Shown here in pieces: positions 4,984-46,084 of a stretch of DNA of 64,000 bases. Positions within the stretch are counted from its first letter, which is position 1, and each line of letters begins with the position of its first letter. The translations under genes were made by a program, and so were the position numbers. Source of the DNA: Rhodosorus marinus CCMP1338 (lineage: Eukaryota; Plantae; Rhodophyta); contig JAMWBK010000003.1 of the NCBI GenBank assembly GCA_029953675.1, positions 2,108,001 to 2,172,000 of the forward strand, read 5' to 3'. The notes under the pieces are model-generated. The model was not told the origin of the DNA, ran no database searches, and worked only from the letters and a program-made list of their open reading frames with translations.

Positions 4984-6691
4984 TTCGTGGACACACACAA
5001 CACCGCAAGAGCAAGGAAAACTTGTAGAACTCAACGTCCTAAGCTCCTGCTACTTGTATATAAATGGACCTCCAAAAACACCAAGCAACCTTTCGTTCCA
5101 TATCCACCCAGCAAAGAATCCAACTTGCAGGGGTTGATGCTACCAGAGAATGCGAGAAGCTCTTAATCTATCTGCCAATGTGCTCGTAATCCTGTGACAT
5201 CCTCCTGATCCGGGTAAACGACCTCGCCATGGACCAACCATGCCCACTCCTCAACCGCCCTCACACACGCAACGCAAACGACATTCAAGCAAACGCCACA
5301 TCATCCATGCGCAATCAATTCTTAACATTACCCGAAGCCGTGCTCCACCGCCACAGATCCAGAACGCCTCTCCACCTCCCCCCTTCTCAGTCACCGCCCC
5401 CACCACGCATATCCTCGTCGGAAATCAACCATCCATTTTGCAAAGCATCCAAGCCCATGGCCACAACGGATATCGAAAGAAAAAAAAATCCCCGTCCCTC
5501 GAATTCCGCCCTCTTTCCACTACACGAACAAAGAAGCAATTAAAATTCCAAAACACATTCCCAACTACACCCGCGACGGTGGACCGCCGCCCTTCTGAAA
5601 ACTCTTTCCCCACCGCGAAAAAATAGGCTCCTGTTTTTTTACTTAACGCTATTCAGCGGCTTTTCCATCCCCACACTGCTGCTTCCAAAAAAAAAGAAAC
5701 ACCCCTGCGGAATGTCTTCTACCTCACCAAACGTACCCTACACTATTTAAACAATAACCATATTATTTATACTATATAGTTCCTGAATTAGTTTTAAAAA
5801 TTGATTATCTTTATTCAAAAACGATCTAAATATTGCTTGTAAGCAGGAGGAAAAGGCTTAGGTTCTTTTCTGCGTGTTCTCGCCCGACGTCCTAAAAAAA
5901 AATAACAAAAATGTAAATTACAGCCTGTGTAGTGTTTTTGTTGACTGAATATCAATCAAATAAATTAGGGCGATGGAAATTTTTTTTTGTTTTTGGCTCT
6001 TTTTTTGAGGGGGCCAACGAATTTTTTCTTTTTCGGATTACTATGAGAAGAAAAAGCGAGGACCAGGTGATTTTTTTCAAATTTCCGTTGAAAAATAGAA
6101 TAAACGTTCCATTATTTCTGTCTGCAGTAATTATCTAGGCGACGATTGGGTTTAATAGTTATTGTAAATATTTAGTTTTTGAAGTAATATGGTTAATTTG
6201 CATTTTGAAGAATCTCTTGGAGATGTTTTGATTGGTATATTGATCTGATATCATGGCCAATTACGTAACGGAATATCAAGCAGTAAAATTGATTTTAACC
6301 AATGGAAGTAATGTATAGGAAGGATTTGTATGGGAATATCGATATTTCTTTTGTTTTATTATTCTTTGATCGACAATCCTGTGCTGGGGGATTTGTATTC
6401 TCTTATTACCATCGAAGAGCAACCTCTTCTGGATTTGGTTTTTTGCAGGGTTTAATTCTTCGATTAATTAAGCGTTGGAGGGTTGGAGGTTTGGGGGGGG
6501 GGGGGATGGGCTTATCGATGGTTATTAAAGCGGCGGAATAGAATTTCCTCTGTGTGTGGGAAGGGTTGGAGTAGTGGGGAGCGAAAGGAGGGTTGTAAAG
6601 GTTTTTATTGTTATTTTTTTTATTGAGGTGGGAGATCTTGTTGGTTTGGGAGTGAATTTTTTTGAGGAAGGTGTTGCTTAGTGTTGGGAAG

Positions 6692-7087
6692 ATGGTGGAT
6701 GGGCTGTGTATTAACTGTCGAACGACGAGTACGCCGATGTGGCGAGCTGGGCCGGCTGGGCCCAAGTCGCTTTGCAACGCGTGTGGGTTGAGGTGGAAGA
6801 AGGGAGTGCTCAAGCTAGATGAGTCTGGAGATAGGAACTCTGTGAGCAGCACCGAGTCTTCGAAGAGGAAGGAGGCCGCAGCGAAGGCGAAGAGAAGTGG
6901 GATCCCGTCTACAAAGGTGGCTACTGGAAGAGTGGCTAAGAAGGTTCGCACGGGCTCATCTGAGAGGGTATACTCGCGGATTCCTGCGGAGGTCAAGCCG
7001 AAGAAAGTGTATGTAGATTTCGACAGATACGAGTGCATTTTCGCAGGTTTGATGGTGGTCAACAAGTTTAAACATCAAATGGTCTGA
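6692..7087 (+). CDS. GATA zinc-finger transcription factor (C-X2-C-X18-C-X2-C, plant type), single exon
   Basis: [32 protein letters not shown]. First ATG is at 6692; the ORF track starts at an upstream TTG. Confidence 0.95.
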
Positions 7088-9559
7088 ATCTGAAGGCACG
7101 GCTTCACCTGCCCGTGGAGGCTAAGCGAAAGGGACGCATCAGCATGGAGACCTTTTGCTTGTGTATGATATAAGATATCTATCTATATATAAGGACATTA
7201 TCTATAGTGATTATTTATAGATCAAGGCCAACGAGTCCGTAAGCCATACAGATCGTATTTATGACCATCACGATCTTTTTTACAAGTTTATTCCCACAAC
7301 CAATACTCAATAAACCAAAGCCATTTATTCGAACCCCCGCATCATCATTCAACATCTTCACTCACCGAGGTCTCACCACAGATCCCGAAAGAGCAGCCTC
7401 CTGCCCGCTAGAGATGAGGAATGCAAAGGTCCAAACAGGCAGCTCAAAGAAACACAAATGTGAAAACAGAAAAATCTACGAAAATCTCAAAAACCCCGCA
7501 GGAACATTATCCCAAAGAGCCCCCACATGACATTTCATGCTCCTTTACCATTCACCCGAGATCTCATGAAATCCCAGCAAACCGTGCTCAGCATGCGCGC
7601 CATCATCATCCAACCAAAACAATAAGGTTCGAGATCGATTTTTTTCAATGCAAACCTAACCCCTTCCCTCTCAAAAGTTCATCTCCCCAAGCTCTAAACT
7701 CCAATTTTCCTGAAATTCAGAAAAATTCCATTCCATCCCATCTTACAAAGGATTTCCCATCAATATAGATACATACAAGTTATATCCCCTTTACCTAAAT
7801 GCTTGAAATAAAATACTTTCTATTTATTACCATAATACCTAAACTATCAGCAAGAACGAAAAGTCATCTCCCCCCCCTAGCAGATAGACTTTCTCTGGAA
7901 AGAGACACCTGTCCATATCAATCTGGGACGATTTTTAATAAGTTTTTCTATTTGAATATCTCCAGAAAATAACAAAAACTTAACGGCATGAAATTTGTTT
8001 TGTTCGTTCTGGTGGAGATCAAAAATTCAAAGTTTTGTCCTGGCCATAGATTTTGTTGCAACATTGGTCGTAAATATTTCTTCGGAAAACGAAACAAAAT
8101 CTATTAGCTTTTTGGGGACATTTAAAACGTTTCAGCAAAAAAAACTTGTCGGAGAAATACGCTGGGGTGGTTTGGGGTTGTGATTTTTCTTCCGTTTTTT
8201 AGGATTGCCTACGTGGGGTGAGAAAGACGGTTAAGAAATCGCATGGAGTTTTGCGGGGAATTCTCATGGAAGTGGTGAGAGTCGTGGAATGGTTGTGTGG
8301 GGAGGAGAAGCGGGATGTCATTGCCTTTCATGATTCTCTCCCAGATTTATTTTTGTTGGAGGATGTGGTCATGATGGGGCGATTAGCAAGCGACTAGATC
8401 ATGACCACTCCGATGAGTGATGGTTCATCATCGGATGAACGCGTTATTGTGGGCTCTACTTGCAGCTCGTGACTGCTTGCTTTTCTCCCAAACTCTGGGG
8501 ATGGAAGCGGCACACTTTTGAAAAACAGAGCGCGCACCATCATGTGCATGTGCCTTCGGAGATTGTGGTTCGAGCACGTGGATCTCATTGCTCCCTGTTA
8601 TGACTCGCCAGGCAACATCTCACTGGATTCCAAAGCTGCACGCTGGATGTCAAAGGATTCGGTCATCCTCTCCAGTACTTTTACTTGGGACGACATGAGC
8701 TGGGCAACTCCGGTCAGCATGCCGTCTGTATACCCAACCGCCTATGGACTGAAGCAGATCTGATCCAGTCTGCAATTGGAAGCTCTTCTAAACAGGTCCC
8801 ATTTGGAGATACCAGCCGGATCTTCAAGTGCTCACCATCTCAAAGAAAAAGAGTAGCCATCCCTGCCACTATTCAACCGCAACAAGCCAAAGCCCACGCA
8901 AAAAAATTTCCGCGTATATCTATTCCCCATCCAAACGTCACCTCCAACAAAATATAAGAGATAAACCCTCGGCAGCAGCACTCTAATCCTTACACTACAT
9001 GTTCCTCCAAAAACCAAACCCCCTCTTACCCACAAGCTTCATACAACTGCTTTGAAAACGTTCCGAAATGCCCCAGCTCCTCCCCCCATTACCCGCCGCC
9101 TCCTCTTTCCCGAATTCTGAGAACCAGGACAATGCTTCCACTCCTATTCCTTTCAATCAATTAAACTTGAAAATCCAACCAGCCCCCTTTCTCCAATTCC
9201 ATATCCCAGCCTTCCAAAAAGTAAACAAAAACATATCTGAGATTTTTTCTGAATAATTTCTTACGCTGAACAATAAGCACTAACCAATCATCGTCATGAG
9301 AAAATGTCGCCCTCTCTTCGTGTACCTCGAACATGATATCATTTCGTGTAATATTTTAAGAGTCGAAATACTGAGGGAACAGCCTTTTATAAGATTAATT
9401 GTACCATATTTCATTGTATTAATTTTATATGATTGGCTTATAAGAATAATAATATTGAGTTTTTGGATCGTTGCAGGATAATAGGCTTTTGATTGGTTAC
9501 AATGAGTAGAAAAGTATCTGTATTGGAGATACAGAATCAAAATGATTTGGGACAAACTG

Positions 9560-11122
9560 GGACTTGCAAATTGGTGGTGGCTTGTACTGGGAAGGGGACG
9601 TTGGATTACCTGCGTTTCTTCAAGCAGCGACTTACCCAATAGATTGTGAAGGGATATGAAAGGCGGCAGGTCTGTTTTTTTGACGCGTTGTTTTGTAAGA
9701 AAGGTTTGGAACTCCCTGTTTGAATTTTGCATTATCCCCTGATGGCACAGATCCTGAACCGAATCTACGTGCTGTTTCATATGGCCTTTGGTCAGTGGTT
9801 CCGATGTATCATCAAGGGGTTGTAGAGAATCAATTAAGTCAGTTTGGCTCTGTCGGAACTAGTCACTGCGTTCATGCGCTACTACTCTGGTTTCACGTGA
9901 AGCACGCAACTTAGGTAAACCCCAGGGCGACCCGGGAGAGACGGGTAACTAGAACATTTACGGACCAATGTTGCTCGACGGTGGGGAAGCTTAGTGAATG
10001 GAGTAAGGTACCCATTGAGACCGGATAAGACGGAAGCATTGTATCCTTCAGGATTAGTGCATTCCTCCGTTTGCGAGAAGCTTTTGTAGAACCGTACTCG
10101 ATGTTCCTGATTCGACTTTCGTTCTCTGTTGCGGGGTTGCCCACGGTATACTCTATTCGAAAGTTGCCCGTCCTGAGCCCGTGGAACTGGTCAATCGTGT
10201 GCATGAGCACACCCCATCCCCATAGCGTTGATCCTTTCGAATGCTAGAACGCAAAAATTGTGGACCACTTGAGCAGTCCCTCTCGGTCATGGCTCGCTCC
10301 CACCCTTTCTCTCAACTCATGCCCCCAACCGGACAGTCGACCCTATGAAACTTGAAATAGGACCACTGTTTGTGGCGACAGGAAACAGAACTTCCCCTTC
10401 ATCTGCTTCCGACTGAACCAATTACAATTTCAAAAAAAGTCGAAAGGGAAATTTTGCTCCCACCACCCCCGAATTTCGTAAGAACACAGTGGACACCTTC
10501 GATGCAAGAAACGAACTAGCCTTGCAGACCTGGTCCACAAGCGCTACTGATCTCAAAGAAGTGCTTGTGCGTTTTGTACATGTCAAGCTTGTTCTTTGAG
10601 CGAACTTGCTTTGTACCGTCAACACCATCGTGATGTCCGTTAAGCTAGTAGAAAACCAGCTTCTTGGAGGGAAAAGTACCTGAGAAGCTTGATACTTCAA
10701 AGAATCGCAAAAAAGACAAAAGCCCGCAGGCGTTGAGACCTGCATTGGCGTTTTCTGAAGCACACTTTCCTTCCTAAAGTACATCAGAAGCGCTCATAAG
10801 CTCTCCATCGTTGATCTGATGAAATCTATTGTGAAATTCCTCCACGCGCTTCAGGAAGAGCTTCTATACTCATCTCCACGACCATGGAACGTTCGCTATG
10901 GAAAAGCTTCATCATCTTCAGAGCAGTCGCTGTATGCGGGATAGTGGCGATCTTTGGGAAATGAGCTCTTTCATCGGGAACAGATTTCGTAGGGTCTTTT
11001 CTGAAGCAACCATCGGTTGCATTAGAAAAACACACCTGTGGCAAGAAAGAGGACCATTTCAGAAGCTCTCCATCTTTTTGATGTCAGCATTAAGCTATGG
11101 ATCTCCAACCAGTCAAGAGTAG
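9560..11122 (+). mobile_element. Probable decayed DNA transposase relic (CMC: CACTA/Plavaka-like), many stops and frameshifts
   Basis: Fragments TDLKEVLVRFVHVKLVL (~10530-10597) and EKLHHLQSSRCMRDSGDLWEMSSF (~10901-10972) resemble C-terminal CMC-family motifs (L..RF...K.VF; K.H.L.H....IR..G.L...S.F..E). No intact ORF and no TIRs found. Confidence 0.35.
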
Positions 11123-11669
11123 CTTCTAATCCCCATCTCGGCAACAGCCGGGGAAACCTCTTGCCTTCAAGCACGCTTTGTCTGACACCTCGACACTCGG
11201 CCATTCATCATGAACAATCACGGTCGACATTCAGAGCAATAGCTCTTGAACAAGCTCCATCGGGACCTTCATCGTCATCTTCAGCATAGGTTTCTTCCCT
11301 CTCGAGACAAAGTGAGACTCTCCACAAGAGCCGAAACAGTCTTCAAAAACTTTTCACAAATCAGCTTTCATCCTCCTCGCGACTCTTTAATCACTTGGGA
11401 AGCAGCTCGTAGAAGCGCTGGAGTTTGGGAGGCTGAGAGCCGCCACAGAAGGATTTTCTTCGAACAGTTCAGAAATTTCTTGCGTCCTAGCCCTTGTGGA
11501 GAGCAGCAGAAGGCTCATCGGAGATGTTGTGCTCGCCTACACGATTGACCAGTGTCTCATGCGCTCACGAAGGGGAAGCTTTCGAAAAGAGTAGCCCGAC
11601 CGATACCCGTCAGCAAGGAGCGGAATTCAAAAAAAGGTCCTTAGGATCTCCGTCGCAGCCCCAGGACTC

Positions 11670-12125
11670 AAACAAGCATATACACTTCGAGAAGAGACCA
11701 TCAGGGCGGCTTAAGGTAAACACTCACGCAACCAACCACCAGCAGCGCTATCTGAGAATTCTGAAGGGACGCCTACTAAGGGCACAAAACGGAATGTGCT
11801 TCATCTTCAATCGCACTTCAAGAACGTCTTCATCGTCCTTAAGCATTTTGTCAGGGCGGGCTTCCTCAACAGGTTTAGTCGGAGGCTAAAGTCGGCAGAG
11901 AGCGAGCGGTCGAACAAACGTACACATGGAGAACAGAGCATCAGGGCGGTCAAGGTAAAACATTCACGCAGCCAAGCACCACCCGCGCTACCTGAGAATT
12001 CCGAAGACCCCTTTGACTAAGGGCACAAACTGGAGCGTGCTTCACCTTCAATGATACTTCGAGAAAGGTCTTCATCGTCCTTAAAAGTTGGGAGATTTGG
12101 TCAGGCCGAGCTCCTCAACAGCGAA
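11670..12125. repeat. Diverged direct repeat, two units with 240-nt period
   Basis: TCAGGGCGGCTTAAGGTAAA at 11701 vs TCAGGGCGGTCAAGGTAAA at 11941. Shared blocks CTGAGAATTC, GACTAAGGGCACAAA-like, GTCTTCATCGTCCTTAA and CTCAACAG recur at about the same offset. Confidence 0.85.
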
Positions 12126-12339
12126 TGTATTGTTATGATGTCTTTCATCAGCTGGTCAATGTGGGTGGAGGGGGAGGGAGGAGGATGGGATGGGATGGAT
12201 AGCTAGAAGAAGTCAAATTGAGTGACGTGACGAGGAGATGATGCTGAGGATAGGTTCAATGAGAGTTAGAATCTAGGTTTTCCTGGACTTTTTTGTTGGG
12301 GGGAGGGGGGGGGGGAGGAGGGGTAGTTTCGAAGAGGAT

Positions 12340-13881
12340 ATGGCGTTGAACGAATTAGAGAATGGAGATGGTGAGGAATCTTTGAAAGGATTTTACACCT
12401 GGGGTAGGGCGAAGAATTATCGCCTGGGAAGGGCAACGGACACGAACAATGTTCGACGTCCTGAGCTTGTGGCGGCTTTGGCTGGGATTGATGTGAAACA
12501 GGTAGGGATTGCCTTATTCTTTGTTTCTTTGGTCTACGAAGAGCGGGCTGAATGAGCATTTTCTGGACGGGGCGTGGTTGGTTGTTTTGTGAATTTGGTT
12601 AGGGAGCTTGCGGAGGTGGACATACGTGTGTCGTTCTTTTGGATCACCGGTTGTTTGTATTTGGGTACAGTCAGTATGGACAAGTTGGTCTTGGAGATCG
12701 AGTAGACGTGAATGCTCCTTCGCAAGTGAAGATCATGAAGGACGCGCATGAAGTTCATGATGTGGTTCAGGTCGCTTGCGGGAGATACCACACGATTGCT
12801 CTGACCGCCAGCGGCGACGTCTATACCTGGGGTGGGGGAAAGAACGGACGTCTCGGACACGGGGACGAGAAGATTCGGACTCTACCAGCAAAAGTCGTTG
12901 CTCTCACCTCCCCCGTCAAGTTCATCGCATGTGGATACCACAGCAGCATCGCCATCACAGAGCAGGGCGTCTACTCATGGGGTTGGGGAGCTCACGGACA
13001 ACTCGGACATGGAGATTCCAATGACCGACTCAGTCCACAGAAAATGAAGTCAATCAACGACGTACGTTAAATCTCCACACACCAATCCAACCTTTCAGCT
13101 GAAGATTCCCACCTAGACCTCGTGAGGTCGAGGTTCCATTGAAACGATCTACGGATTGAAAAGGACTGAAGCCTAATCTGATCTACTCTCATCGCCTTCT
13201 TCTGCTTCTTCTTCTTTAAAGAACATTGTCTTCGTCACCTGCGGTGACCGCCACGGCTTCGCGTTAACAGCTGAAGGAGAGGTTTATGGATGGGGATCGA
13301 ACGAATTCGGACAGCTTGGATTTGGTGACCGAGGAGAGATCATTTTGAAACCAGTCAAACTTGAAAATTTATCCGGTCTAATCATTAAGGAGATTTCTTC
13401 TGGTGACCGTCATTCTGCAGCCCTCACTAACACTGGCGTTGTCTACACCTGGGGTTGTGGATCGGACGGGCAATGTGGCCACGGAAGTTATCATCATTCG
13501 CCGCGGCCGAAGGCTCTGCTGTCTATTCCTGAACCTGTTGTCCACGTTGTCTGCGGACATAACTTCTCCATGGCGTTGACGGTGGATCATAACGTTTACG
13601 CTTGGGGCAGCAACATGTACGGACAGCTTGGCTGTTACATGACGGAGTCTTCAGTAGCCAAGCCGACGAAGATCGCGATGAACTCTAGAGTACGTGGATT
13701 GGCCTGTGGGCACTTTCATGGTCTACTGTGGACAGGACCGGATGAGGGTCTCAACAAGAGCGGGAGGGAAAGATCGGAGGAGGAGTTGGACAAGGCTGCA
13801 AGTGGTCTGCTGCAGAAGCTGGAGGAGGATCGAGTCTCAAGGTCGAAGATGATCAATACGTTAGAGAAGCTCTGTACATAA
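12340..13881 (+). CDS. RCC1-repeat (UVR8/RCC1-like beta-propeller) protein, multi-exon
   Basis: Seven repeats with YTWGRAKNYRLG, VFGYSQYGQVG, VACGRYHT..YTWGGGKNGRLGHG, YSWGWGAHGQLGHG, YGWGSNEFGQLG, YTWGCGSDGQCGHG and YAWGSNMYGQLG; short C-terminal helix. Confidence 0.93.
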
Positions 13882-14056
13882 GTGACGCTTTCTGTACATA
13901 CCAGAGCATGATAGGAGGGTTTCTTCAAAAGTTCACGAAGGCGTCGACATGTATATAGGCCAACGCCGGTCGACGTGTGATCGAAGGCTTTTTGCCTCCT
14001 TGACAGTGCGCAGCGAAGACACGCCACGTAGATAATAAAGATTCTGTTTTTTTTGA

Positions 14057-16033
14057 TCAAAGCTCATCCTTTGTAGTTTCATCGGCGGATTCGTCGGATG
14101 CGCTAGTATCGCCAGAGCAGGTCTCCGCATCAGCCTGCGAAGGTTCCGCGTCGGAGGAAGAAGCTGTCGGTTCACCGCTATCGCTTGGACTCGAGTCCGG
14201 TTCGTTTTCGTATCGACCTAGTGAGAGCTCGGCGAGTAAATATCTTGCCTTCACATAGTTCACATCAGGCCATGTCTCCTGGACCTGTGGGGAGGGTGTA
14301 GTATACGATCGACGTTCTCGATGTTAGAGGAAGAGAAGAAGGAACTACATTTTGGAGCAAACTAATTCGTTTGGACAGCCGTACAGCTAGAATCGCCTTC
14401 TCAAAGTCGATGCAGCCTTTAAACGCCGTGATTAGTTCCTCAAAGAGCTCCAAGTCGACGGTTGGGGCCTTCTCAGCCCACTGGAGGACTTCCTCGTCCG
14501 CGTAGTACTCTCCGTAGAGCTCCAGAGTGTTCAGGAACGGTTCCATGAACACGCCCTTGCACGATTCGAAGAACGCTGAGAATCGCGTTGCAAGTTCGGT
14601 CATCGAGCTGTACTTTTCGTTACGCGTCGTCTCGAGCTAGCCGGTAACCAGGTTCGTTACAAATCGTTAGCAGCAGGACTCAGTGAAGTGTGCACTAGGA
14701 GACAGTAACGGCAGCGAGCTTACCTCAATAACAGCTGCTGAGCATGGAAAGAGTTGGCGCATTTCGTCACTGATGTCAGCTCCAACCTACACGTTTTACG
14801 GAACGAGGTACGCGCATTCATCTTCTTCAGAGAAGGGGGGAATTTTTTTGAAAAAGGGAAAGCGTAGTTCTTATCGGCGCCGAACCTTTACGGCAGCTAC
14901 CATGACATTAAACCAAGTGTGTGTGTTGCTCTCCATCAACGGCGTGAGGATGATGTCCTTGGCTTTCGGACAGAGGCAGCACGTGAGCACGGTAATGAGC
15001 GCGTCACGAAACGTCTGTCTGTGGGACTCGACGTGAATAACGAGGTGCATTGAAGGCTTCTCTGTGTGCGTCCCGCTCTGTAAGATGAATCCTCGAGGGA
15101 TGTAGAGGACATCGCCTTCCTTCAATGTGGTCTCCGGCAGTGCCGATCCGTTGAATGGTCCATTCGGAGTGTACTCGAGGTGCGGGTAGGGTTTTTGTAT
15201 CTCTGGAACAGAAAGCTGCACGGTCTGTTCTCCATCAAGTTGAATTACCCATCTGTTTTGCGGAGACAGTCCATAAGTTTCTTTCCGGGCGAAACAAAAT
15301 GTCCGGGCTCACGTAGGCACCGACATACCTGTCGTCTGCAGAAAACTCTGCAAGGGACTCGATACTATGTTCTTCCGTCCATCCTGGAGGGACGAACAGC
15401 AATTGAGACGTCACCGGAAAGGAGAGAAAATCCTGTATATACTGGGTCACGTTGAACACTGTCCTTGATCTCAACTCCATCGCCGCCATTCGCAAGCGGA
15501 ATCCGTCTTTGAAAACGGAATGGACGTTGGCAATGGGGACGGAGCTGTTGTCGGAGACGTGCGGCCACAAGTTTTCGATAGATTTCATCACCCAGGCTTC
15601 ATGCTCGCCTTCCTGTTCCTATTTGTTGAACGTTGGGGGAGTCGTGGGGTGAGCGCTTCCAGCCAGCTTCGAAAGCGCTAAGAACGAGTAGGGACCTTAC
15701 CATTCCAGGCTTCTCGAACATAATATCCTCCTTGTAAACCAGAGGAGAATCTTTATAGACAGATAGATTCCGACTGATGAGCGCGTCTAGATCACGATCG
15801 CCGGGAAGAAACGAGCGATACAGTTTGATCCAACTTGAACGAGCCTCACCGGATCGCTCATCGAGACGGATCAGGAGCGGCTCCTTATCCAAATAATCAG
15901 CAATAAAAGTCTGTTGATCGGTCTTCGGGCCAAGCAGGACTCCTACGTCATCATCGGTGGCTCCAACAAAAGTTCCGGTCAGAAGCAGCAGCGATGTGAA
16001 CATCCAAAAGCTCTGACCTCGAAGAGCGCCCAT
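14057..16033 (-). CDS. JmjC/cupin_4 (ribosomal-oxygenase NO66/MINA/YcfD-like) fold protein with signal peptide and C-terminal KDEL; probably catalytically inactive; multi-exon
   Basis: N-terminus is hydrophobic (FWMFTSLLLLTGTFVGA). QQTFIADYLDKEPLLI matches the ROX N-terminus. The spliced core reads SLAEFSADDRWVIQLDGEQTVQL...TTLKEGDVLYIPRGFILQS...SMHLVIHV. The protein ends TKDEL-TGA at 14057. Confidence 0.8.
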
Positions 16034-17398
16034 GGTTGCTCCTCAAGTTCAACCTGTCTCCAGCAGTCGTTGTCCCTCTTCGCCTCTCCGTCTCTCTCTT
16101 AAAGCGCTCTTTTTTTTCACTTTAGATCTTACCCAACTGAAAACACTTGACCTCTCCCACAGTCTCGAAAGGTCGCTGCCAGTGAGAACACCGGCATTGA
16201 AGTGACCGCCAAGATCGAGGTCTGTAGAGGGAGTGAGACAGACAGGAACCTGCCTCGCTTCAGATGGCGGCTGCTGCTGTGCGTCGATGTAAGCATGCCA
16301 TTTGCGACGACAAACGGTGAGCTCCTACCATATGCTCAGGAACCCATCTTCATCGCACTTGGGATTGAATGTTTGGGCTCTATGGATCACCAAAGGACCT
16401 GGGGGGAAGCTGCTCTTTGGCATTAAAAAAGAAGATCCTCTTGAAGACGATTTCGGACTCTTCTTGGATTACGGTTGTCAGGGTTTGGTCTTCTGACGCA
16501 GATTGTCCGATTCGACTCGGTAACAGTGTTGGAAATGTTGGTGAAGTGAGGATCAACCATCCCTGCACATTGGCGATCCTCCGTCCTCATGGATAAGCTC
16601 AAACGTTGGGGAAAGGCATGATCTGCTTCAACCTGGTTTTCATATGTGTGCTGAGGTACTTCCTGTTCAGCACGTGCAGAGTTCCATTTCACTTTGGGAC
16701 GCTGAATCAGCACAAGGTCCAGGAAATTTGGAGAGCGTGGGCTTCCTTTTTCCTCGTGGGTGGGTGCTCAAGATTATTGTTGACGTCGACAGAGTATTGC
16801 CGGTTTAGCTTGACGAGTGGGTATTCTTCCGAGAGACCTGTTCATCTCCGGCGGGATTTCAGAGAGCCGCCCCCCCAAGCAGAGCTTCATTATTGTATTG
16901 TATCAATATCTAATACTCTCTCTGGAAGGGAGTTTTACCAGCAACTCTTGCAAGCATACGGCGAGATCCGAGAGATTCCTGACCTGCAACTAGCCTAAAG
17001 TTTTGCTTCCATGGAGGATACACTCATGCGGCAACCTACTGCAAACCAACTCGTTCGGACAACGCGCTGTCAGCGCATCCTCGATCATGCCCACGAACGC
17101 GATTCAACTGCCTTTCCATCCAAATCCGAGCTGGGCGAGGACATCACAACTGCCAGCACCCTCCAAAAGTAATGCCCAAGCGCAATCAACGCAATCGAAC
17201 CAGAACGTTTCCACAGCATGCCTAGTACTAACCCAAACAGGTACCACCAAAAACAAGCCCTGATAGCAAAATATACGTAGATGTCTGAATTAAAATTCAT
17301 AATTAGATATTATTAAGACAAAAAAATCAAAATTTAGATTCGATAAATCTATATAATAGCCTTCCTATCTATTTTACTGTACTAAATTTCCGGTCTAT

Positions 17399-19956: not shown

Positions 19957-20598
19957 CTAGATACTGGATGCGTTCCTTTCTGTACTTTTTAAGCGTCGCT
20001 TCTTCCTCAACAGGAGAGACCTAAAGATCTTAAGTTCCGACTGCAGTTTGTCGGAGACAAAGTTCTTGACGAACTGATTATTGAAGACGGTGCGAAGCCA
20101 TTGAGGAAGCTCAAAACCGAGCCGAATGCTCACTTCACACTCTTCGTTGGATAGAGTCCTGAAGGACACCGACCCACGGTTCTTAAGCCCTTCGACGCTC
20201 TCCCAGCATATCAGCTTCCCCCTGATAAGCTGAGTAATCTTAGCTCTCCACGAGAACTTAAATCCGCTTGACGCGATGCTCCACTTCGATATATGATCAG
20301 GCCCTCCCTCAAGCTCAACTGACTGCAACCACGGAGCCCAGTTCGGCATATCCTCTAGCCTAGTGTACTCCTGAAATACATAATCGGCCGGTGCCTCGAT
20401 CTTCTGTGAAGCGTAAAAATCATACCACGAGCTCATTGCCACACCGGCCCCAGCACCAGCACCACCAGCCCTACCCCTCTTAACCAATCTAAAACGAACT
20501 CCTTGATTCCAAACGAACGACCTCCCCCGGTGTTGCCCTTGCCGACTCTGCCGACAAGGGACACCTCCGCCTCCAACAAACCCAACACCCGCCATCAT
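19957..20598 (-). CDS. Plastid-targeted SRPBCC / polyketide cyclase-like (START-fold) protein
   Basis: Transit-peptide-like N-terminus (GVGFVGGG, Arg/Gly-rich), then IEAPADYVFQEYTRLEDMPNWAPWLQSV...SWRAKITQLIRGKLICWESVEGLKNRGSVSF, as in cyanobacterial/plant Polyketide_cyc proteins. Confidence 0.88.
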   Translation of the reverse strand: MMAGVGFVGGGGVPCRQSRQGQHRGRSFVWNQGVRFRLVKRGRAGGAGAGAGVAMSSWYDFYASQKIEAPADYVFQEYTRLEDMPNWAPWLQSVELEGGPDHISKWSIASSGFKFSWRAKITQLIRGKLICWESVEGLKNRGSVSFRTLSNEECEVSIRLGFELPQWLRTVFNNQFVKNFVSDKLQSELKIFRSLLLRKKRRLKSTERNASSI

Positions 20599-22583: not shown

Positions 22584-24045
22584 TCAGGTTTGAGTCTTAT
22601 CGTCAACCCTGAGGTCTCTGAACTCCGCCAGAGCTTCTTTGATTTCCTTCATCGAGATATCGTTGGCGAAGGTGTACGAACCCACTCCAGTTATCAGAGG
22701 AACCCTCTGCTTTCCGTGGCGGTGCTCGACAGCGTCTGTCAGGCCCTTCCACATGACGTCCTCAGTGCAGCCGTCGTGGAAAGTAGGAAGCTGCATCGAC
22801 TTCATGGTATTTTTAACTCGGTCCCTCACCTCGCTAGTGATCAGGCCCCTTCCGTGGGATAATACAACACAGAAGAATCCATCCACATTCACCGCCTCCC
22901 CGTGCATGATTGGGGGCTCTGCCACCATCTCCAAGATCTTGCTGAAAGAATGTCCGTAGTCGACGCATCTCTCAAGCTTGTATTCCCAGAGATTCGGACC
23001 GAGCTCCTGTTGAGAACAGAAAAGTTAACCTTCTACTCTCAGTCTCGAGTCACCTAGCCAAGGCACAGCTTGGTGACGCTATAGAATGCGACCCTACCTC
23101 AAGCATCAGCTCAATCGCAAGCTCGATCACCCGGTCTGCAACGAAATCAGAGCCCTGAAAGCGTTCCGCAATAATACGTGCCCCGTGCTCCTCGAGAAGT
23201 GAGAACAGCTCTTCAGATCTAACCAAGGCAAGCTTCATGATTTCGCACAGTCCGTTCCTGATGTTCCTCTCGTCCTGAGTAGCAATGAAGCTCTTATCGA
23301 GGAAGGCCGCGCAGGGCGCATAGAACGAACCCATGCGGTTCTTCAGGGGACCCTTAGACTTTGATTCGTAGTCTACTCCTGTCTTAACTCCAACCGAGGC
23401 GTCCACGATCGCCAGGAGCGTTGTTGGAACTCTGATATAAGGCACTCCCCTCCTGCACAAGAGAAGTCACGTTTAGGAAAGTTGGTTATCAAAGGACGCA
23501 ACCTAATGGGACTCTTCACGCAGGGGAATGCTTTACCTGTAGAGGCTGGCCGTGAAGCCGACGACATCTAGGACGACACCACCGCCGACTGCAACGATGG
23601 GCTCCCTTCTATGAAGACCAAAGTCGCAGAGTTCTTCGAAAATCTTGTCCACAAGAGCGAATCGCTTGTTCTCTTCTTCCCCCGGGATGACCACGATACG
23701 CCACTCAACCTTAAAGTGATCGAAATACTTTCTAATTCTTTCTCCGTACAGTTCATCGACTTTATCATCGACGACGAGGAACCTTCTCCTCGGACAGTTC
23801 TCCGGCATAAACCTAGTCGCCAAGGTATCATTGTCCAGCGAAAACAGGCTCTGGTAGCTCTCCACAGTATATTCAACGGGTAGCTCGTAGTAGTTCGTCC
23901 ATTCCTTTCTGCAACCTTCCTTGAGGCCCACGGTCCTTATGAAAACGTTCCTCGGAGCTCGAGCGCATCTCTCCCCAAGCTTGTCAAAATCAGTCGGATC
24001 AATACCCGCCGCGGCAGGGCTCACAAAATCTTCGCCGCTAACCAT
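22584..24045 (-). CDS. Sedoheptulose-7-phosphate cyclase, 2-epi-5-epi-valiolone synthase (EEVS) type; 3 exons (24045-23537, 23452-23098, 23006-22584)
   Basis: [100 protein letters not shown] and HRHGKQRVPL. Both introns are GT-AG and restore the frame. Confidence 0.9.
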
Positions 24046-41768: not shown

Positions 41769-43316
41769 CTATCCGTCAAGCTCTTGGACGAGCAAGAGAT
41801 CCTCCAGGAACGAGGCGAGCTCGGGGTGAGGCTGCAACTTCAGTGCAGCGCGTAGCGGCTGACAAATCTTCTTCAGCTCCTTCAAATCAACACTCGGACC
41901 ACCAGGGGATCGAGTCTCGAGAAGTCTATGAACAGTTTCAAGGGCCATCAAGCCCGTCAGCATATCTCGTTCAGAGCTCCGTGATCCTTTTGCTACCAAA
42001 GCGCATAACTGAGCCAAGCGCACGTGTACTTCTTTGTTCCTCAGGGTTCCTCGATTAGCACCCTGGGAAACTAACAGGAACCCCGGCGTCAGGATCTCCA
42101 GATTATCTAAGTCGACTATTTCAGATAGTTGGCCCATGCACCTCGCACTCTCCTTCTCCAGAGCTGGGATCTCGAGCACGAGAAATGCACAGAGCACTCT
42201 ACCAGCAGCGAGAGCGAGTTGATTTCGAACGGTCGAATTATGACCTTCCTGAAGGCTCTCCTGGACTGCATCCACAAACTCGAGGAGCACCCCGATAGCG
42301 TCCACAAGAACTTTCATAACCCCCACTTCAGCTCGTTCTGCTTCTGAAAGCTCGGTAGATGACTCGACAAGGTTCCCTTCGAGCTCCCGGTAGGTCTCCA
42401 CGATACTCTCCATGACCTCGAAACAGAGCATACACATTTGAAGGTTGTCCGAAACCCTTTCGTCTGAGAGACTCAGATTCTCCAGGGTCAGGTCTCCATC
42501 CGGCGTGGTTTCCTTATACATTACAAAGTCCTTCATCCGGACGCGAAGCTCGACTTCGACGAGCCTCAGCGCTAGTTCAATGGCCTTCAGATCATCCAGG
42601 TCACTGTATCCAATATTATCGGCTTTCAGAGCTGCTTTGAGGAGCTCAAACGCTCCTCTTCGAGCTGCAGGTCCAGGGTTTTTGGTCATAACCTTGACAA
42701 GCCCCTGTCCAAAGCTAGTGCTTGCTTGCATGTTCACACACGTGACGCCAACACTCAGTAGTCGCTTCAAGACTTCATCGCTAGTGCCATCCTTCGAACT
42801 CTCCTCCAGTATCTTCTGAAGACCGCTGATGAACTTCGATCGATTGGCAGCTTTCAAGCAATCCAAGTTTTCGGAGAGCAGAGTTGCCAGAAGGACGCAG
42901 TCTTCCGTTCTCGGCTTTTCCGAGTCCGAGAATGCTGTCCACAGCTCTACAACTTCATTGTTGAGTAGCTGCGAAAGCTGGGACTTGCTAACGCGCTTGG
43001 ACAGCCTCACAAAGAGCACAACGAGCGCCTCGTGGTCATCCTTTGAGATATCGGCCGTCTTAGCCACGTTCAGGGCGCTGTCGATGTACCGAGATTCAAA
43101 TTTGGCCAGCGCAGAAGCGACATTTAGGGACAGATACCTCAATGATGCGTTCGTTGCCAGTCCATCTCCCACGCCTCGAGGGAGCGAGTCCAGAACTCGC
43201 TCTAACACTGAAGACGGGGGGTCCTTCTCAAGAATTTCAACCGCGATTACAAGACCCGCAACGACCTTCTTGTCGTCCCTCGATCGGAGCAACTGTTCCG
43301 CCTCTTCTACACTCAT
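41769..43316 (-). CDS. Neurochondrin-like ARM/HEAT-repeat protein, intronless
   Basis: AEQLLRSRDDKKVVAGLVIAV, LALRLVEVELRVRM, LCFEVMESIV and LAAGRVLCAFL follow the neurochondrin motif order; all-helical, about 515 aa. Confidence 0.65.
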   Translation of the reverse strand: MSVEEAEQLLRSRDDKKVVAGLVIAVEILEKDPPSSVLERVLDSLPRGVGDGLATNASLRYLSLNVASALAKFESRYIDSALNVAKTADISKDDHEALVVLFVRLSKRVSKSQLSQLLNNEVVELWTAFSDSEKPRTEDCVLLATLLSENLDCLKAANRSKFISGLQKILEESSKDGTSDEVLKRLLSVGVTCVNMQASTSFGQGLVKVMTKNPGPAARRGAFELLKAALKADNIGYSDLDDLKAIELALRLVEVELRVRMKDFVMYKETTPDGDLTLENLSLSDERVSDNLQMCMLCFEVMESIVETYRELEGNLVESSTELSEAERAEVGVMKVLVDAIGVLLEFVDAVQESLQEGHNSTVRNQLALAAGRVLCAFLVLEIPALEKESARCMGQLSEIVDLDNLEILTPGFLLVSQGANRGTLRNKEVHVRLAQLCALVAKGSRSSERDMLTGLMALETVHRLLETRSPGGPSVDLKELKKICQPLRAALKLQPHPELASFLEDLLLVQELDG

Positions 43317-43902
43317 GCTTTTTCCGCTCTTGTTCACTGAACGGCGTGGTCTATTGCAGTCCATAGCTTACGTCCGCCGCTCCCCGCAGAGTTCAACTTT
43401 TACAGCAAGCGCATCATTGCAGTGTGGTAGATCTTCCAGAGAATTTCATGGAATCCCAGCTCCTCTAGAATCTAGAGCCCCGGCAACAAGCTCTATACGG
43501 TAGCAGACCTCAAGCAGTCACTAATCAAGGCTCTCCTCATAAACCTTTGCTGTGCACTACCGGGACATCGATAGAGTGGGTCAACGACGCCAGGGGAAAC
43601 CCAGAAATGTGGTCTGGAGAAATGTGGTCTGGAGCTAGATACGACCAAGCGAAGAGGGCAGCTGCCAGCGGAGGCGTTTTCTGTCCCGATGCAAGACGCC
43701 TAGTCGAAAATTTTCTGTATTTCTCTTGGGCCATGTGGTTGTAACATCGGCCTGTTTCAGACCGACATGTGCTGTCAGGATTTGGTCGGGCACGGAACGG
43801 TCGCATTTTCGGGTACGACGGAGAACGCTTCTGACACTAAATGGTGGTTTTTACTAGGACATGAGTTGGTACCATCGGCCAGTCCTACTCGTAGGCCGTA
43901 CT

Positions 43903-44766
43903 TCAGAGCTTTCCTCGGAAGAGATCATATCCTATTTGGTGCCAAAGGGGTTGGAGTAAGTTCTTCACGTAGGTCTTCATCGCCTCTGTTGATGTTGCTG
44001 AAGCCCGAATGAGAGTGATTGGATGGTCGACGGGAAAATTTGTAGAGATGGTTGAAAGCGAGGCCACGACATCTCGAGTCTTCGTGCTGGGCCGAATGGA
44101 ATCGAGCTGGATCTTCTCCTGTGCGTGCTGAATGCACTTCTCGGTTTTGGGGCCGACAAGGAGGAGCGTGAAGATCACGTCGAAACGTCCCATGCGACTT
44201 TGTAAACTCCCGGAGCTGTTTTCCAGCACCATCCTGTCGTGAAGCAGCTGAGTTCCGCCCAGCTTGAGATTAATCTCCGATTCAAACAAGTCGAACTGCC
44301 ATCGCTCGCCCATAGCACTTCTCCCAGACGTGAACCAATCCACAAAGACCAGAGAGCCACCAATGGAGACGTTGAGGTCGAAAAGCTGGGAATAGACCGC
44401 CTTCGCGAAACAGACTGTGGGATCTGGAAAAATTACCGCAAATCCGCCATCCTCGATCGAAAGACAAAGCGTCTGACAAGTTTTGGCGTCCAAATCTTCA
44501 GGCTTCCGGTAGACTTTCGTTGAGCTCTGGGTTGTAAGGGCGAGGCCGGAACCGGTCTTCACGACAACATCCATGAGAATGACGTCTCCAGCCACCAAAC
44601 CACCGCCGTATGTAACAAGATAAGCCAAGAGATAGCCTTCTCGGCTGGTCAAAGTAATCCATTTAGACGGATATCCGGCGACAGCGGTTATAGCGGTACT
44701 CTTCCCTCGTGCCAAGTGAACGACGAGACGATCACGATGTGAAGAGCTTAGAGTAGAGCCTATCAT
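43903..44766 (-). CDS. ureD: Urease accessory protein UreD
   Basis: YPSKW, YLVTYGGGLVAGD, LTTQSSTKVYRK, FPDPTVCFAKAVYSQ, VDWFTSGRSAMGERWQF, LLHDRMVL and TLLLVGP. Confidence 0.95.
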   Translation of the reverse strand: MIGSTLSSSHRDRLVVHLARGKSTAITAVAGYPSKWITLTSREGYLLAYLVTYGGGLVAGDVILMDVVVKTGSGLALTTQSSTKVYRKPEDLDAKTCQTLCLSIEDGGFAVIFPDPTVCFAKAVYSQLFDLNVSIGGSLVFVDWFTSGRSAMGERWQFDLFESEINLKLGGTQLLHDRMVLENSSGSLQSRMGRFDVIFTLLLVGPKTEKCIQHAQEKIQLDSIRPSTKTRDVVASLSTISTNFPVDHPITLIRASATSTEAMKTYVKNLLQPLWHQIGYDLFRGKL

Positions 44767-45448
44767 GGCAGCTTTGGAATATTTCCACTAGTGGTGAGCT
44801 AACATAGGCGTCGTCCACTGAAAGACCGGCAAACTCAGAGAGAAGACACTCTGCTTTCCCGTACAGAGAGCTTTGAACTCTCTGTGCCTCAAAGGTTCCG
44901 ACTATTCCGAGCCTCACTGCGGCGGAGATGACACCCCGTAGGGTGATGAAGAGGAAGAGCCGTTGGGTTTCTCCAAAATTGACCCCAAGCGCCCCACAGG
45001 CATACCCAAAAACAACGGGAAAGTGTCCACAAAGTCTCTTCTCCTTCACTAGTCGCCTCAGCGTGCTGCTGACCTCGGCGGTCTCTGGCAACGTCCTAAC
45101 AGCCGCGAGGAAGGCCAATCCTTGTGCGATTGACGCCCTTCTTCCCACCGCGTTCCCGGCAACCAGTAGATCTAATCGCCGGTCCAACTCGATAGCCCCA
45201 GGACAAACCTCCAGTTGTACCTCCCGGCTACCCGTCCCAAAGTCACTATACGCGGTGCTTACGAAAGGCAAGCCGGAAGTAGCAACATTTCGAACAATTT
45301 CGAGCGTGTACTCGCCGAGATCCTCGATCTCACCAAGCTGTTGTGCTGCTTCAAGTCCAACAGAATGCGAAAAGCCTCCAACCGGGAATGCAGAATCAGC
45401 CAACTGCCATAACAACCATTTGCTACTGTCACTTCGTCCTTCAATCAT
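44732..45448 (-). CDS. ureF: Urease accessory protein UreF
   Basis: WLLWQLADSAFPVGGFSHSVGLEAA, RRASIAQGLAFL, GHFPVVFG, LRGVISAAVRLGIVG and the C-terminal CHDRLYSKLFTS*. First ATG is at 45448. Confidence 0.95.
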   Translation of the reverse strand: MIEGRSDSSKWLLWQLADSAFPVGGFSHSVGLEAAQQLGEIEDLGEYTLEIVRNVATSGLPFVSTAYSDFGTGSREVQLEVCPGAIELDRRLDLLVAGNAVGRRASIAQGLAFLAAVRTLPETAEVSSTLRRLVKEKRLCGHFPVVFGYACGALGVNFGETQRLFLFITLRGVISAAVRLGIVGTFEAQRVQSSLYGKAECLLSEFAGLSVDDAYVSSPLVEIFQSCHDRLYSKLFTS

Positions 45449-46084
45449 CACCTTGAGGACCGATCTAATCCCTTTCGGAGCTCGGATTCCTCACCTCACA
45501 CTATTCAGGAGACTAGATCCGCTTTCCCAGCGTCCCAATACTCGATGTAGTTGGCGGTCCAATCGGATTGTTGTCCATGACTCAATGGACTTTTCTGGTC
45601 TGCCTTTTCACGACCGGTACCCTGTTTTGTCCTCTAAAAAGTTGCGAGGTGATGATGAAGGCCATTATGGGTAGCACTCGAGTACTCGGTTGCAATGTGG
45701 ATTGCCCAGATCAACCCGCCAACCCAGTCCAGGGCGAAAAATTTCATAAGGGAGCTTGTAGTTGCGCGTAAGCGGTTTTCGTCAGTGCGGACCATCGCCC
45801 AGCGACACTGCGATATAAGCTAGAGATCTGCATACGTCTTTGGTGGAAATCCGATAGTGGTATCAAATCAAGTTATTCTCATTTACATTTCCAGGGTCAC
45901 TCATCTGCTTCTCCCAAGTCAGACTTGGAAAATCAAGTCCGACATCAATCTTGGAACAAAGAAAAGCCGAACAACTGGAAAAAGACAAAAAGGAGTAAAA
46001 ATATATAGATACTTGAAAGTCTGTATAGATATCAGTGCACCGAGTGGTGTTTCAGTTTCAGTCCCAGTCCACATGGCTAGGACC

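What the first reader, a model, noticed from the sequence alone, without database searches (positions are those of the whole stretch)
22584..24045. Spliced stand-alone EEVS-type sugar-phosphate cyclase without its usual partner gene
Seen: after removing two introns the protein has [11 protein letters not shown] and LERCVDYGH. Established: these match the EEVS signature (MLEEL.PNL.E / R..D.GH). They do not match the MAA-pathway DDGS (MLELE.PNLHE / LDRVIAYGH) or shikimate DHQS (LN.GHT.GHA). EEVS starts C7-cyclitol synthesis (gadusol in fish with MT-Ox; valiolone/validamycin in actinobacteria), whereas the characterised red-algal MAA genes are DDGS/O-methyltransferase type. No methyltransferase, MT-Ox or ATP-grasp gene was recognised in this 64 kb. 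Inference: this alga may make gadusol or another cyclitol (UV screen, antioxidant or osmolyte) by a non-clustered pathway from an old, intron-acquired, possibly horizontally derived EEVS.
Basis: partly seen in the sequence, partly recalled or inferred. Interest (0 to 1): 0.7.

Follow-up and report, generated by a model that had tools for sequence, protein, structure and literature searches.

The report
Red-algal EEVS-like sugar-phosphate cyclase gene
This is a real, expressed, three-exon gene of the red alga Rhodosorus marinus for a sugar-phosphate cyclase of the EEVS type, but it belongs to a widespread algal branch that normally stands alone and is separate from the branch that makes the sunscreen gadusol, so the gene is ordinary for a red alga and its product is still unknown.

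Summary
A minus-strand gene (24045..22584, three exons, GT-AG introns of 84 and 91 nt) encodes 428 aa containing [11 protein letters not shown] and LERCVDYGH. The protein is identical to GenBank KAJ8906884.1, a "hypothetical protein" of Rhodosorus marinus.

It is a DHQS-fold sugar-phosphate cyclase. Its closest solved structure is the EEVS ValA. It carries the three published EEVS-versus-DDGS discriminators (L290, D304, H383), and it lies outside DDGS, DHQS, EVS and EboD.

It is not a gadusol-type EEVS. It sits in an algae-only clade (red algae, glaucophyte, brown algae, diatoms; NJ bootstrap 90-97). Every member has two features absent from all other cyclase classes compared: Lys where EEVS and DDGS have Pro, and a 5-6-residue insertion in a substrate loop. 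The EEVS genes found next to MT-Ox (Aureococcus, one environmental contig) cluster with vertebrate EEVS in a different clade (bootstrap 100).

No methyltransferase, oxidoreductase or ATP-grasp was detected in the 64 kb, and none of five loci of this clade has MT-Ox nearby. Red-algal members were already listed as "EEVS" in 2015.

Most likely it cyclises sedoheptulose 7-phosphate to 2-epi-5-epi-valiolone or a close C7 cyclitol, for an unknown non-gadusol pathway. Interest is modest.

The parts
23537..24045 (-). Exon 1 (ATG at 24045; aa 1-169 plus 2 nt of codon 170). Holds the clade-specific N-terminal motif ARAPRNVF (23941-23964) and the NAD-site GGG (23578-23586).
   Evidence: The spliced product is identical to KAJ8906884.1.
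23453..23536 (-). Intron 1, 84 nt, GT..AG, phase 2, inside the first Arg codon of YRRGVPY. Galdieria yellowstonensis has an intron at the same position and phase.
23098..23452 (-). Exon 2 (aa 170-288). Holds [14 protein letters not shown], the lengthened substrate loop KTGVDYESKSKGPLKN (23338-23385), the metal ligand E240 (23242-23244), and the start of [11 protein letters not shown].
23007..23097 (-). Intron 2, 91 nt, GT..AG, phase 0, between E288 and E289. It is not shared with Galdieria, whose second intron follows GHTFSK.
22584..23006 (-). Exon 3 (aa 289-428 plus TGA). Holds L290 (23001-23003), D304 (22959-22961), metal ligands H307 and H323, the clade-specific K311 (22938-22940), and H383 (22722-22724).

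Best explanation
The gene encodes a functional, transcribed NAD+- and divalent-metal-dependent sugar-phosphate cyclase of the DHQS fold. It belongs to an algae-specific sister branch of the characterised EEVS enzymes. By analogy with ValA and zebrafish EEVS it should oxidise sedoheptulose 7-phosphate at C5, eliminate phosphate, reduce the ketone again, open the ring and close a carbocycle by intramolecular aldol reaction. The product would be 2-epi-5-epi-valiolone or a closely related C7 cyclitol. In Rhodosorus, as in other red algae, brown algae and diatoms, the gene stands alone and is inherited vertically. It feeds a downstream pathway that is not the EEVS/MT-Ox gadusol pathway and is not yet identified. 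Shown here: gene structure, expression, fold, conserved catalytic and cofactor residues, EEVS-type discriminating residues, clade membership, and absence of partner genes in 64 kb. Inferred: the substrate, the product and the physiological role.
For: Family and fold:
- Pfam DHQ_synthase plus DHQS_C score above their cut-offs.
- The best PDB sequence hit is ValA 4P53 at 3.6e-91, then DDGS 5TPR at 7e-70, then DHQS at about 1e-34.
- The AlphaFold model has pLDDT 88.8. Its best fold match is 4P53 (TM 0.92, rmsd 2.1 A), then 5TPR, then DHQS structures.

Residues:
- All DHQS-derived cofactor, metal and phosphate columns are conserved (R, D, K, N, E, K, E, H, H). Met replaces DHQS K250 and Asp replaces N268, as in EEVS.
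- The published EEVS/DDGS discriminators ValA L267/D281/H360 (MysA E254/A268/T347; PMC10666671) are L290/D304/H383 here. They are L/D/H in at least 126 of 129 clade members.

Phylogeny:
- NJ trees place the protein in an algal clade (bootstrap 90 and 97) inside the EEVS/DDGS assemblage and outside DDGS, DHQS, EVS, EboD and DOIS.

Conservation and expression:
- 49-80% identical orthologues occur across red algae (Galdieria, Cyanidium, Cyanidiococcus, Porphyridium, Compsopogon, Hildenbrandia, Pyropia, Gracilaria, Chondrus), a glaucophyte, brown algae, xanthophyte, raphidophyte and diatoms.
- 76 columns are invariant in a 50-sequence alignment.
- MMETSP transcripts exist.
- Intron 1 is shared with Galdieria.

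Partner genes:
- There is no MT-Ox, O-methyltransferase or ATP-grasp in the window or near four other clade loci.
Against: No member of this clade has been assayed, as far as the searchable literature shows. All 129 clade members differ from every verified EEVS in two ways. They have Lys instead of Pro at ValA-288, the position of active-site His275 in DHQS. They also have a 5-6-residue insertion in the loop between the substrate-binding Lys and Asn (DHQS K152-N162), which is 11 residues long in every reference of the other cyclase classes aligned. A relative thought to use sedoheptulose 7-phosphate, EboD, turned out to use mannose 6-phosphate (PMC12904256), so substrate and product cannot be read from similarity alone. 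The sister relation to verified EEVS has weak support (bootstrap 40-55; NJ only).
Confidence: 0.6

Rival explanations
1. One reading: a true EEVS that starts gadusol synthesis, with an unlinked MT-Ox (or separate methyltransferase and oxidoreductase) elsewhere in the genome.
For: It has the EEVS-type discriminating residues. The clade is the nearest neighbour of the vertebrate/MT-Ox-linked EEVS clade, though weakly. Eukaryotic pathways need not be clustered.
Against: Both algal EEVS genes found next to MT-Ox are short-loop, non-Lys types that cluster with vertebrates at 100% bootstrap, apart from this clade. No MT-Ox lies within 64 kb here or within +-10 kb of four other clade loci. Osborn 2015 found MT-Ox outside vertebrates only in Aureococcus and Coccomyxa, although red-algal and diatom genomes were available. 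In the MT-Ox search no named red alga appeared among the algal hits, but fish sequences saturated the list, so this is weak evidence.
Confidence: 0.12
2. The algal clade has diverged in function. It uses another sugar phosphate, or releases a different cyclitol stereoisomer, for a conserved algal metabolite such as an osmolyte or signalling cyclitol.
For: The Lys-for-Pro change and the loop insertion are invariant across 129 sequences and are absent from all the other cyclase-class references compared. The clade persists in lineages with very reduced genomes (Cyanidiophyceae), which suggests a core role. EboD is a precedent. In Galdieria the gene lies beside myo-inositol-1-phosphate synthase and inositol monophosphatase.
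Against: All residues currently known to steer EEVS versus DDGS chemistry are EEVS-type. The insertion is modelled as a hairpin of only moderate confidence, and its contact with substrate is not shown. The Galdieria neighbourhood is not conserved elsewhere.
Confidence: 0.25
3. It is the DDGS of a mycosporine-like amino acid pathway, or the shikimate-pathway dehydroquinate synthase, mis-assigned from its motifs.
For: NCBIfam's best models are aroB-type. Automatic names in databases say '3-dehydroquinate synthase'.
Against: The aroB scores of 201-203 bits fall far below the cut-offs of 305-333. DHQS K250, N268 and H275 are M, D and K here. DDGS E254, A268 and T347 are L, D and H here. Identity is 27.7% to AnDHQS and 34.7% to DDGS, against 40.7% to ValA. 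The trees exclude both.
Confidence: 0.03

Closest known systems
[quoted passage not shown]
   Same: Best sequence match (3.6e-91, 40.7% identity) and best structure match (TM 0.92). Same cofactor and metal residues. Same L267/D281/H360 discriminators. Same MLEEL..PNLWE..R..D.GH motifs.
   Different: ValA has Pro288 and an 11-residue Lys-Asn loop. The algal protein has Lys311 and a 16-residue loop. ValA sits in a bacterial biosynthetic cluster, whereas this gene is solitary and has introns.
Vertebrate EEVS (zebrafish LOC100003999) and the MT-Ox-linked algal EEVS of Aureococcus and contig L007 (gadusol pathway)
   Same: Eukaryotic EEVS with the same discriminating residues. This is the nearest clade in the trees. 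Identity is 40%.
   Different: Those form their own clade at 100% bootstrap, with short loops and P, M, Q or I at the Lys311 position. They lie next to MT-Ox (Methyltransf_3 + short-chain dehydrogenase). This gene has no such neighbour.
[quoted passage not shown]
   Same: Same clade, with 49-63% identity to the published algal references and named database orthologues. Same GH[ST]FSK motif, long loop and N-terminal RAP(K/R)NVF motif. All are solitary genes.
   Different: They differ only in species and intron content. Porphyridium and two others are intronless, and Galdieria shares intron 1. None is biochemically characterised.
DDGS/MysA of Anabaena variabilis (PDB 5TPR)
   Same: Same fold, probably the same substrate, and second-best PDB match.
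   Different: DDGS has E254/A268/T347 and the MLELE..PNLHE..AYGH motifs. Identity is 34.7%, and it forms a separate clade.

Membership tests
Sugar-phosphate cyclase (DHQS-like) superfamily | DHQ_synthase N-terminal and DHQS C-terminal domains above the curated cut-offs | tested here: met
   117.5 bits against a cut-off of 24.2, and 63.8 bits against 27.6.
Sugar-phosphate cyclase (DHQS-like) superfamily | Conserved NAD site, three metal ligands (Glu, His, His) and phosphate-binding Lys/Asn/Arg; DHQS fold | tested here: met
   Columns R/D/K/N/E/K/E/H/H are all conserved. GGG154-156, E240, H307 and H323 are invariant in the clade. The model matches 4P53, 5TPR and DHQS structures.
[quoted passage not shown] | Published EEVS-versus-DDGS active-site discriminators: Leu267, Asp281, His360 (ValA numbering) | tested here: met
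   L290, D304 and H383. They are L/D/H in at least 126 of 129 clade members.
[quoted passage not shown] | [quoted passage not shown] My column list is derived from AnDHQS, because the Kean 2014 paper was not available. | tested here: not met
   Lys311 stands where all 9 verified or reference EEVS and both DDGS have Pro (ValA-288; His275 in DHQS). The K152-N162 loop is 16 residues against 11.
[quoted passage not shown] | Phylogenetic placement with biochemically verified EEVS | tested here: inconclusive
   The protein is inside the EEVS/DDGS assemblage and outside DDGS, DHQS, EVS, EboD and DOIS. However, it sits in its own clade (90-97%), and the sister relation to vertebrate EEVS has only 40-55% NJ bootstrap. 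No ML software was available.
[quoted passage not shown] | Converts sedoheptulose 7-phosphate to 2-epi-5-epi-valiolone | not testable with these tools
   Needs an enzyme assay. No report for any clade member was found.
Gadusol pathway (EEVS + MT-Ox) | Bifunctional methyltransferase-oxidoreductase gene adjacent to EEVS | tested here: not met
   No such domain was detected in the 64 kb. tblastn with the L007 MT-Ox gave nothing below E=5 in the window and no hit below E=1 in loci L001-L006.
Gadusol pathway (EEVS + MT-Ox) | EEVS belongs to the clade of MT-Ox-linked or vertebrate enzymes | tested here: not met
   That clade has 100% bootstrap and excludes the window protein. The Aureococcus and L007 EEVS are short-loop Q and M types.
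Gadusol pathway (EEVS + MT-Ox) | MT-Ox present elsewhere in the same genome | not testable with these tools
   The Rhodosorus genome cannot be searched here. The protein search list was saturated by fish sequences.
DDGS / MysA | Glu254, Ala268, Thr347; MLELE..PNLHE..AYGH | tested here: not met
   The window protein has L, D and H, and lies in a separate clade.
3-dehydroquinate synthase (AroB) | Lys250, Arg264, Asn268, His275 (AnDHQS numbering); NCBIfam equivalog score | tested here: not met
   The four columns read M, E (with Arg one column later), D and K. TIGR01357 scores 202.6 against a cut-off of 305.

The most novel reading that the evidence does not exclude
The Lys-type, long-loop algal clade may be a distinct, ancient class of sugar-phosphate cyclase. 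It would have been retained from the red-algal ancestor and passed to lineages with red-derived plastids. It would make a cyclitol other than the gadusol precursor, or make 2-epi-5-epi-valiolone for an undiscovered pathway that does not involve MT-Ox. That would be a conserved piece of algal metabolism with no assigned product.
Probability: 0.3. Interest if true: 0.65.

Novelty: new member of a known kind. Interest (0 to 1): 0.35.

Why it matters
The gene itself is an orthologue of algal 'EEVS' genes that have sat in phylogenies and annotations since 2015, so finding it in one more red alga is not news.

What is worth carrying forward is that this algal branch is not the gadusol branch. It is separated from the MT-Ox-linked enzymes. 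It carries two invariant changes in the active-site region. It is kept even in the minimal genomes of Cyanidiophyceae, and no member has been assayed.

If its product were identified, it would assign a function to a gene present in most red algae, brown algae and diatoms. It would also stop the automatic inference 'EEVS homologue, therefore gadusol or MAA sunscreen' that is spreading in algal annotations.

Tried and rejected
1. I looked up the 531-aa ORF at 41769-43364 to get database gene calls for the far side of the window. It is not on record. I scanned stop-free segments with Pfam instead. The first greedy filter dropped real exons that were overlapped by longer antisense ORFs (for example His_Phos_1), so I added the dropped segments of >=93 aa back. 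Exons under about 75 aa would still be missed.

2. Kean 2014, Asamizu 2012, Osborn 2017 and Tanoeyadi 2024 are not held. The 14-site ValA fingerprint could therefore not be read. I used AnDHQS-derived columns plus the three discriminators quoted in PMC10666671.

3. I searched the protein database with MT-Ox to ask whether Rhodosorus has one. The query proved to be a true MT-Ox, but from about rank 47 the 120-row list is filled almost entirely by fish, so absence cannot be concluded.

4. I searched with the cyclase-O-methyltransferase fusion P0253, hoping to recover red-algal DDGS-OMT genes. It is an orphan with bacterial relatives, so the search was uninformative. Whether Rhodosorus also has a DDGS pathway stays open.

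5. Conserved gene neighbourhoods gave no partner. The neighbours differ in all five loci. The Porphyridium double methyltransferase has no counterpart in the window.

6. Two literature queries were too loose and returned noise. A yeast gadusol paper had no supplement with sequences.

7. No maximum-likelihood tree program is installed, so the trees are NJ with bootstrap only.

8. DHQS and DDGS assignments were considered and rejected on residues, scores and trees.

Full report
**What is in the sequence.**
The region 22584-24045 holds three minus-strand open reading frames. They join at canonical GT..AG sites into one 1287-nt CDS:
- exon 1, 24045-23537;
- intron 1, 23536-23453 (84 nt);
- exon 2, 23452-23098;
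- intron 2, 23097-23007 (91 nt);
- exon 3, 23006-22584, ending in TGA.

The product is identical to GenBank KAJ8906884.1, 'hypothetical protein NDN08_003368' of the stylonematophycean red alga Rhodosorus marinus. The window maps to contig JAMWBK010000003.1 of assembly GCA_029953675.1. Proteins from Rhodosorus transcriptomes of other strains are also 428 aa. They differ only by 17-23 substitutions, with no indel at the exon junctions. The splicing model is therefore right and the gene is expressed.

**What kind of protein it is.**
- Pfam finds the two dehydroquinate-synthase domains well above threshold.
- NCBIfam's aroB models score 201-203 bits against cut-offs of 305-333, so it is not a dehydroquinate synthase by NCBI's criteria.
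- Among solved structures, the best sequence match is the EEVS ValA (4P53, 3.6e-91), then the DDGS Ava_3858 (5TPR, 7e-70), then dehydroquinate synthases near 1e-34.
- An AlphaFold model built on 50 homologues has mean pLDDT 88.8. Its best fold match is again 4P53 (TM 0.92, rmsd 2.1 A), then 5TPR, then DHQS structures.

**Residue tests.**
I took reference sequences of every cyclase class from the supplement of Osborn et al. 2015 (PMC4426668) and aligned them with the window protein and its database homologues.
- All columns corresponding to cofactor, metal and phosphate ligands of A. nidulans DHQS are conserved. DHQS Lys250 is Met and Asn268 is Asp, as in EEVS.
- A 2023 review (PMC10666671) gives the three residues that distinguish EEVS from DDGS: ValA Leu267/Asp281/His360 against MysA Glu254/Ala268/Thr347. 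The window protein has Leu290/Asp304/His383, the EEVS state.

**Where it departs from characterised EEVS.**
The 120 best database hits are all algal. They come from red algae of every class sampled (Galdieria, Cyanidium, Cyanidiococcus, Porphyridium, Compsopogon, Rhodochaete, Hildenbrandia, Pyropia, Gracilaria), the glaucophyte Gloeochaete, brown algae, Tribonema, Fibrocapsa, Chrysoparadoxa, Triparma and diatom-like sequences.

All 129 members aligned, including the published C. merolae, Chondrus, Galdieria and diatom 'EEVS', share two features that no other cyclase-class reference in the alignment shows:
- Lys at the position of ValA Pro288. This is His275 in DHQS, and Pro in all 9 reference EEVS and both DDGS.
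- A 5-6-residue insertion in the loop between the substrate-binding Lys and Asn (DHQS K152-N162). The loop is 16-17 residues here, against 11 in the EEVS, DDGS, DHQS, EVS and EboD references shown.

Four further columns are fixed differently from EEVS: N to D197, Y to F213, M to L244 and M to G331.

An exhaustive HMMER search of 1.84 billion representatives found 1494 relatives at E<=1e-30. In a pattern scan of the 150 best-scoring representatives, Lys was paired with the long loop only among the top-scoring, algal-type sequences.

**Phylogeny.**
Only neighbour-joining with bootstrap was possible.
- In the first tree the algal clade has 90% support. It is sister to vertebrate EEVS at 55%. EEVS, an uncharacterised bacterial group and DDGS together have 100%.
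- In the second tree, with more diverse representatives, the algal clade has 97%. Vertebrate EEVS cluster at 100% with a set of short-loop environmental and algal sequences that have Met, Gln or Ile at the Lys311 position. The two clades are joined at only 40%.
- The window protein is never inside DDGS, DHQS, EVS, EboD or DOIS.

**The partner gene.**
Database gene calls with Pfam hits cover window 12.6-34 kb. They are RCC1, JmjC, OTU, an SRPBCC/polyketide-cyclase-fold protein, the cyclase, a PPR protein, one protein with no domain, Nop16 and PTPLA.

Pfam scans of stop-free segments of the rest of the window found NHL, PPR, GATA, TMEM254, 5-formyl-THF cyclo-ligase, UreD, UreF, MIF4G, DAP3, His_Phos_1, DNA photolyase and ABC1 kinase. 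No methyltransferase, short-chain dehydrogenase or ATP-grasp was found.

To obtain a real MT-Ox I followed a short-loop Met-type EEVS (P0158) to its contig, L007. It lies head-to-head with a 616-aa protein with Methyltransf_3 and adh_short domains. That protein is 62% identical to Aureococcus AURANDRAFT_30097, 66% to haptophyte proteins and about 50% to fish zgc:113054, so it is MT-Ox. tblastn with it finds nothing in the window, nor within +-10 kb of the Lys-type genes of Porphyridium, Galdieria and two further organisms.

In Aureococcus the EEVS next to MT-Ox is a short-loop Gln-type (GHAFGQ), not a Lys-type. Both MT-Ox-linked algal EEVS types (Met and Gln) fall in the vertebrate clade.

Osborn et al. 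2015 reported that Aureococcus and Coccomyxa were the only non-vertebrates with MT-Ox. Their own sequence set already included red-algal, brown-algal and diatom 'EEVS'. So 'stand-alone' is the normal state of this clade. MT-Ox is the partner of a different clade.

**Age and origin.**
Intron 1 interrupts the first Arg codon of YRRGVPY in phase 2 in both Rhodosorus and Galdieria yellowstonensis. The second introns differ, and the Porphyridium gene and two others are intronless. A shared intron between Stylonematophyceae and Cyanidiophyceae, together with the clade's taxonomic spread, argues for presence in the red-algal ancestor and vertical descent. The ochrophyte copies are plausibly derived through the red plastid endosymbiosis; that last step is inference. 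A bacterial origin of the whole eukaryotic group is plausible, because bacterial enzymes surround it in the tree. The branching order is not resolved.

**Interpretation.**
The most likely function is cyclisation of sedoheptulose 7-phosphate to 2-epi-5-epi-valiolone or a near relative, by the NAD+/metal mechanism common to the family. This rests on homology and discriminating residues, not on assay.

The invariant Lys and the loop insertion lie in or next to the substrate pocket as defined in DHQS. EboD is a recent precedent: it was predicted to use sedoheptulose 7-phosphate but actually uses mannose 6-phosphate (PMC12904256). I therefore keep a substantial probability that substrate or product differ.

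Gadusol synthesis by this alga is unlikely on present evidence. It is not excluded, because the rest of the genome could not be searched. I found no paper that characterises any member of this clade.

**Verdict.**
The idea that a partner is 'missing' is a misreading of which clade the gene belongs to. This is one more member of a known but uncharacterised algal gene family. The modest interest lies in that family's unknown product.

Noticed in passing
window 43906-45490, minus strand: Urease accessory genes UreD (PF01774, 3e-47) and UreF (PF01730, 1e-21) lie directly next to each other on the same strand, an operon-like pairing in a eukaryotic nuclear genome.
   Followed up: no
window ~58078-59567, minus strand: A DNA photolyase/cryptochrome-family gene (PF00875 N-terminal domain, 2e-13) lies about 35 kb from the cyclase. 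No link to the cyclase was tested.
   Followed up: no
window 19957-20598, minus strand: A 213-aa SRPBCC / polyketide-cyclase-fold protein (PF03364) is the next gene, about 2 kb downstream of the cyclase. It is not found next to orthologues in other species.
   Followed up: partly
window 41772-43367, minus strand: A 531-aa uninterrupted ORF has no Pfam match, and no gene with this exact product is on record in the collection.
   Followed up: partly
L006 (Galdieria yellowstonensis) 10001-16720: The orthologous cyclase lies 1 kb from myo-inositol-1-phosphate synthase and 4.4 kb from an inositol monophosphatase, a possible cyclitol-metabolism neighbourhood. It was not seen in the other loci.
   Followed up: partly
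L004 (Porphyridium purpureum) 6041-7690: A 549-aa protein with two methyltransferase domains is transcribed divergently from the orthologous cyclase, 2.3 kb away. It has no counterpart in the Rhodosorus window.
   Followed up: partly
L007 340-3944 and L008 6020-9608: There are head-to-head EEVS/MT-Ox gene pairs in an environmental eukaryotic contig and in Aureococcus. Their EEVS carry Met or Gln where bacterial and vertebrate EEVS have Pro.
   Followed up: yes
Representative proteins P0129, P0132, P0138, P0150, P0178, P0193, P0253: EEVS-like domains occur fused to many partners: ROK sugar kinase (dozens of 720-765-aa representatives; ROK confirmed by Pfam in four), AMP-binding enzyme, nucleotidyl transferase, aldo/keto reductase, O-methyltransferase at either end, and a 2653-aa protein with two cyclase domains plus ROK and zinc-ADH domains.
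   Followed up: partly
window aa 28-35 of the cyclase (23941-23964): An N-terminal motif RAP(K/R)NVF, followed by W.N.(Y/F).LP(V/I).Y, is conserved across the algal clade and absent from bacterial and vertebrate EEVS. It is modelled as an extra beta-strand.
   Followed up: partly
window 56344-57324, minus strand: A 327-aa stop-free segment (ORF of 325 aa) has a run of 15 prolines and no Pfam match.
   Followed up: no
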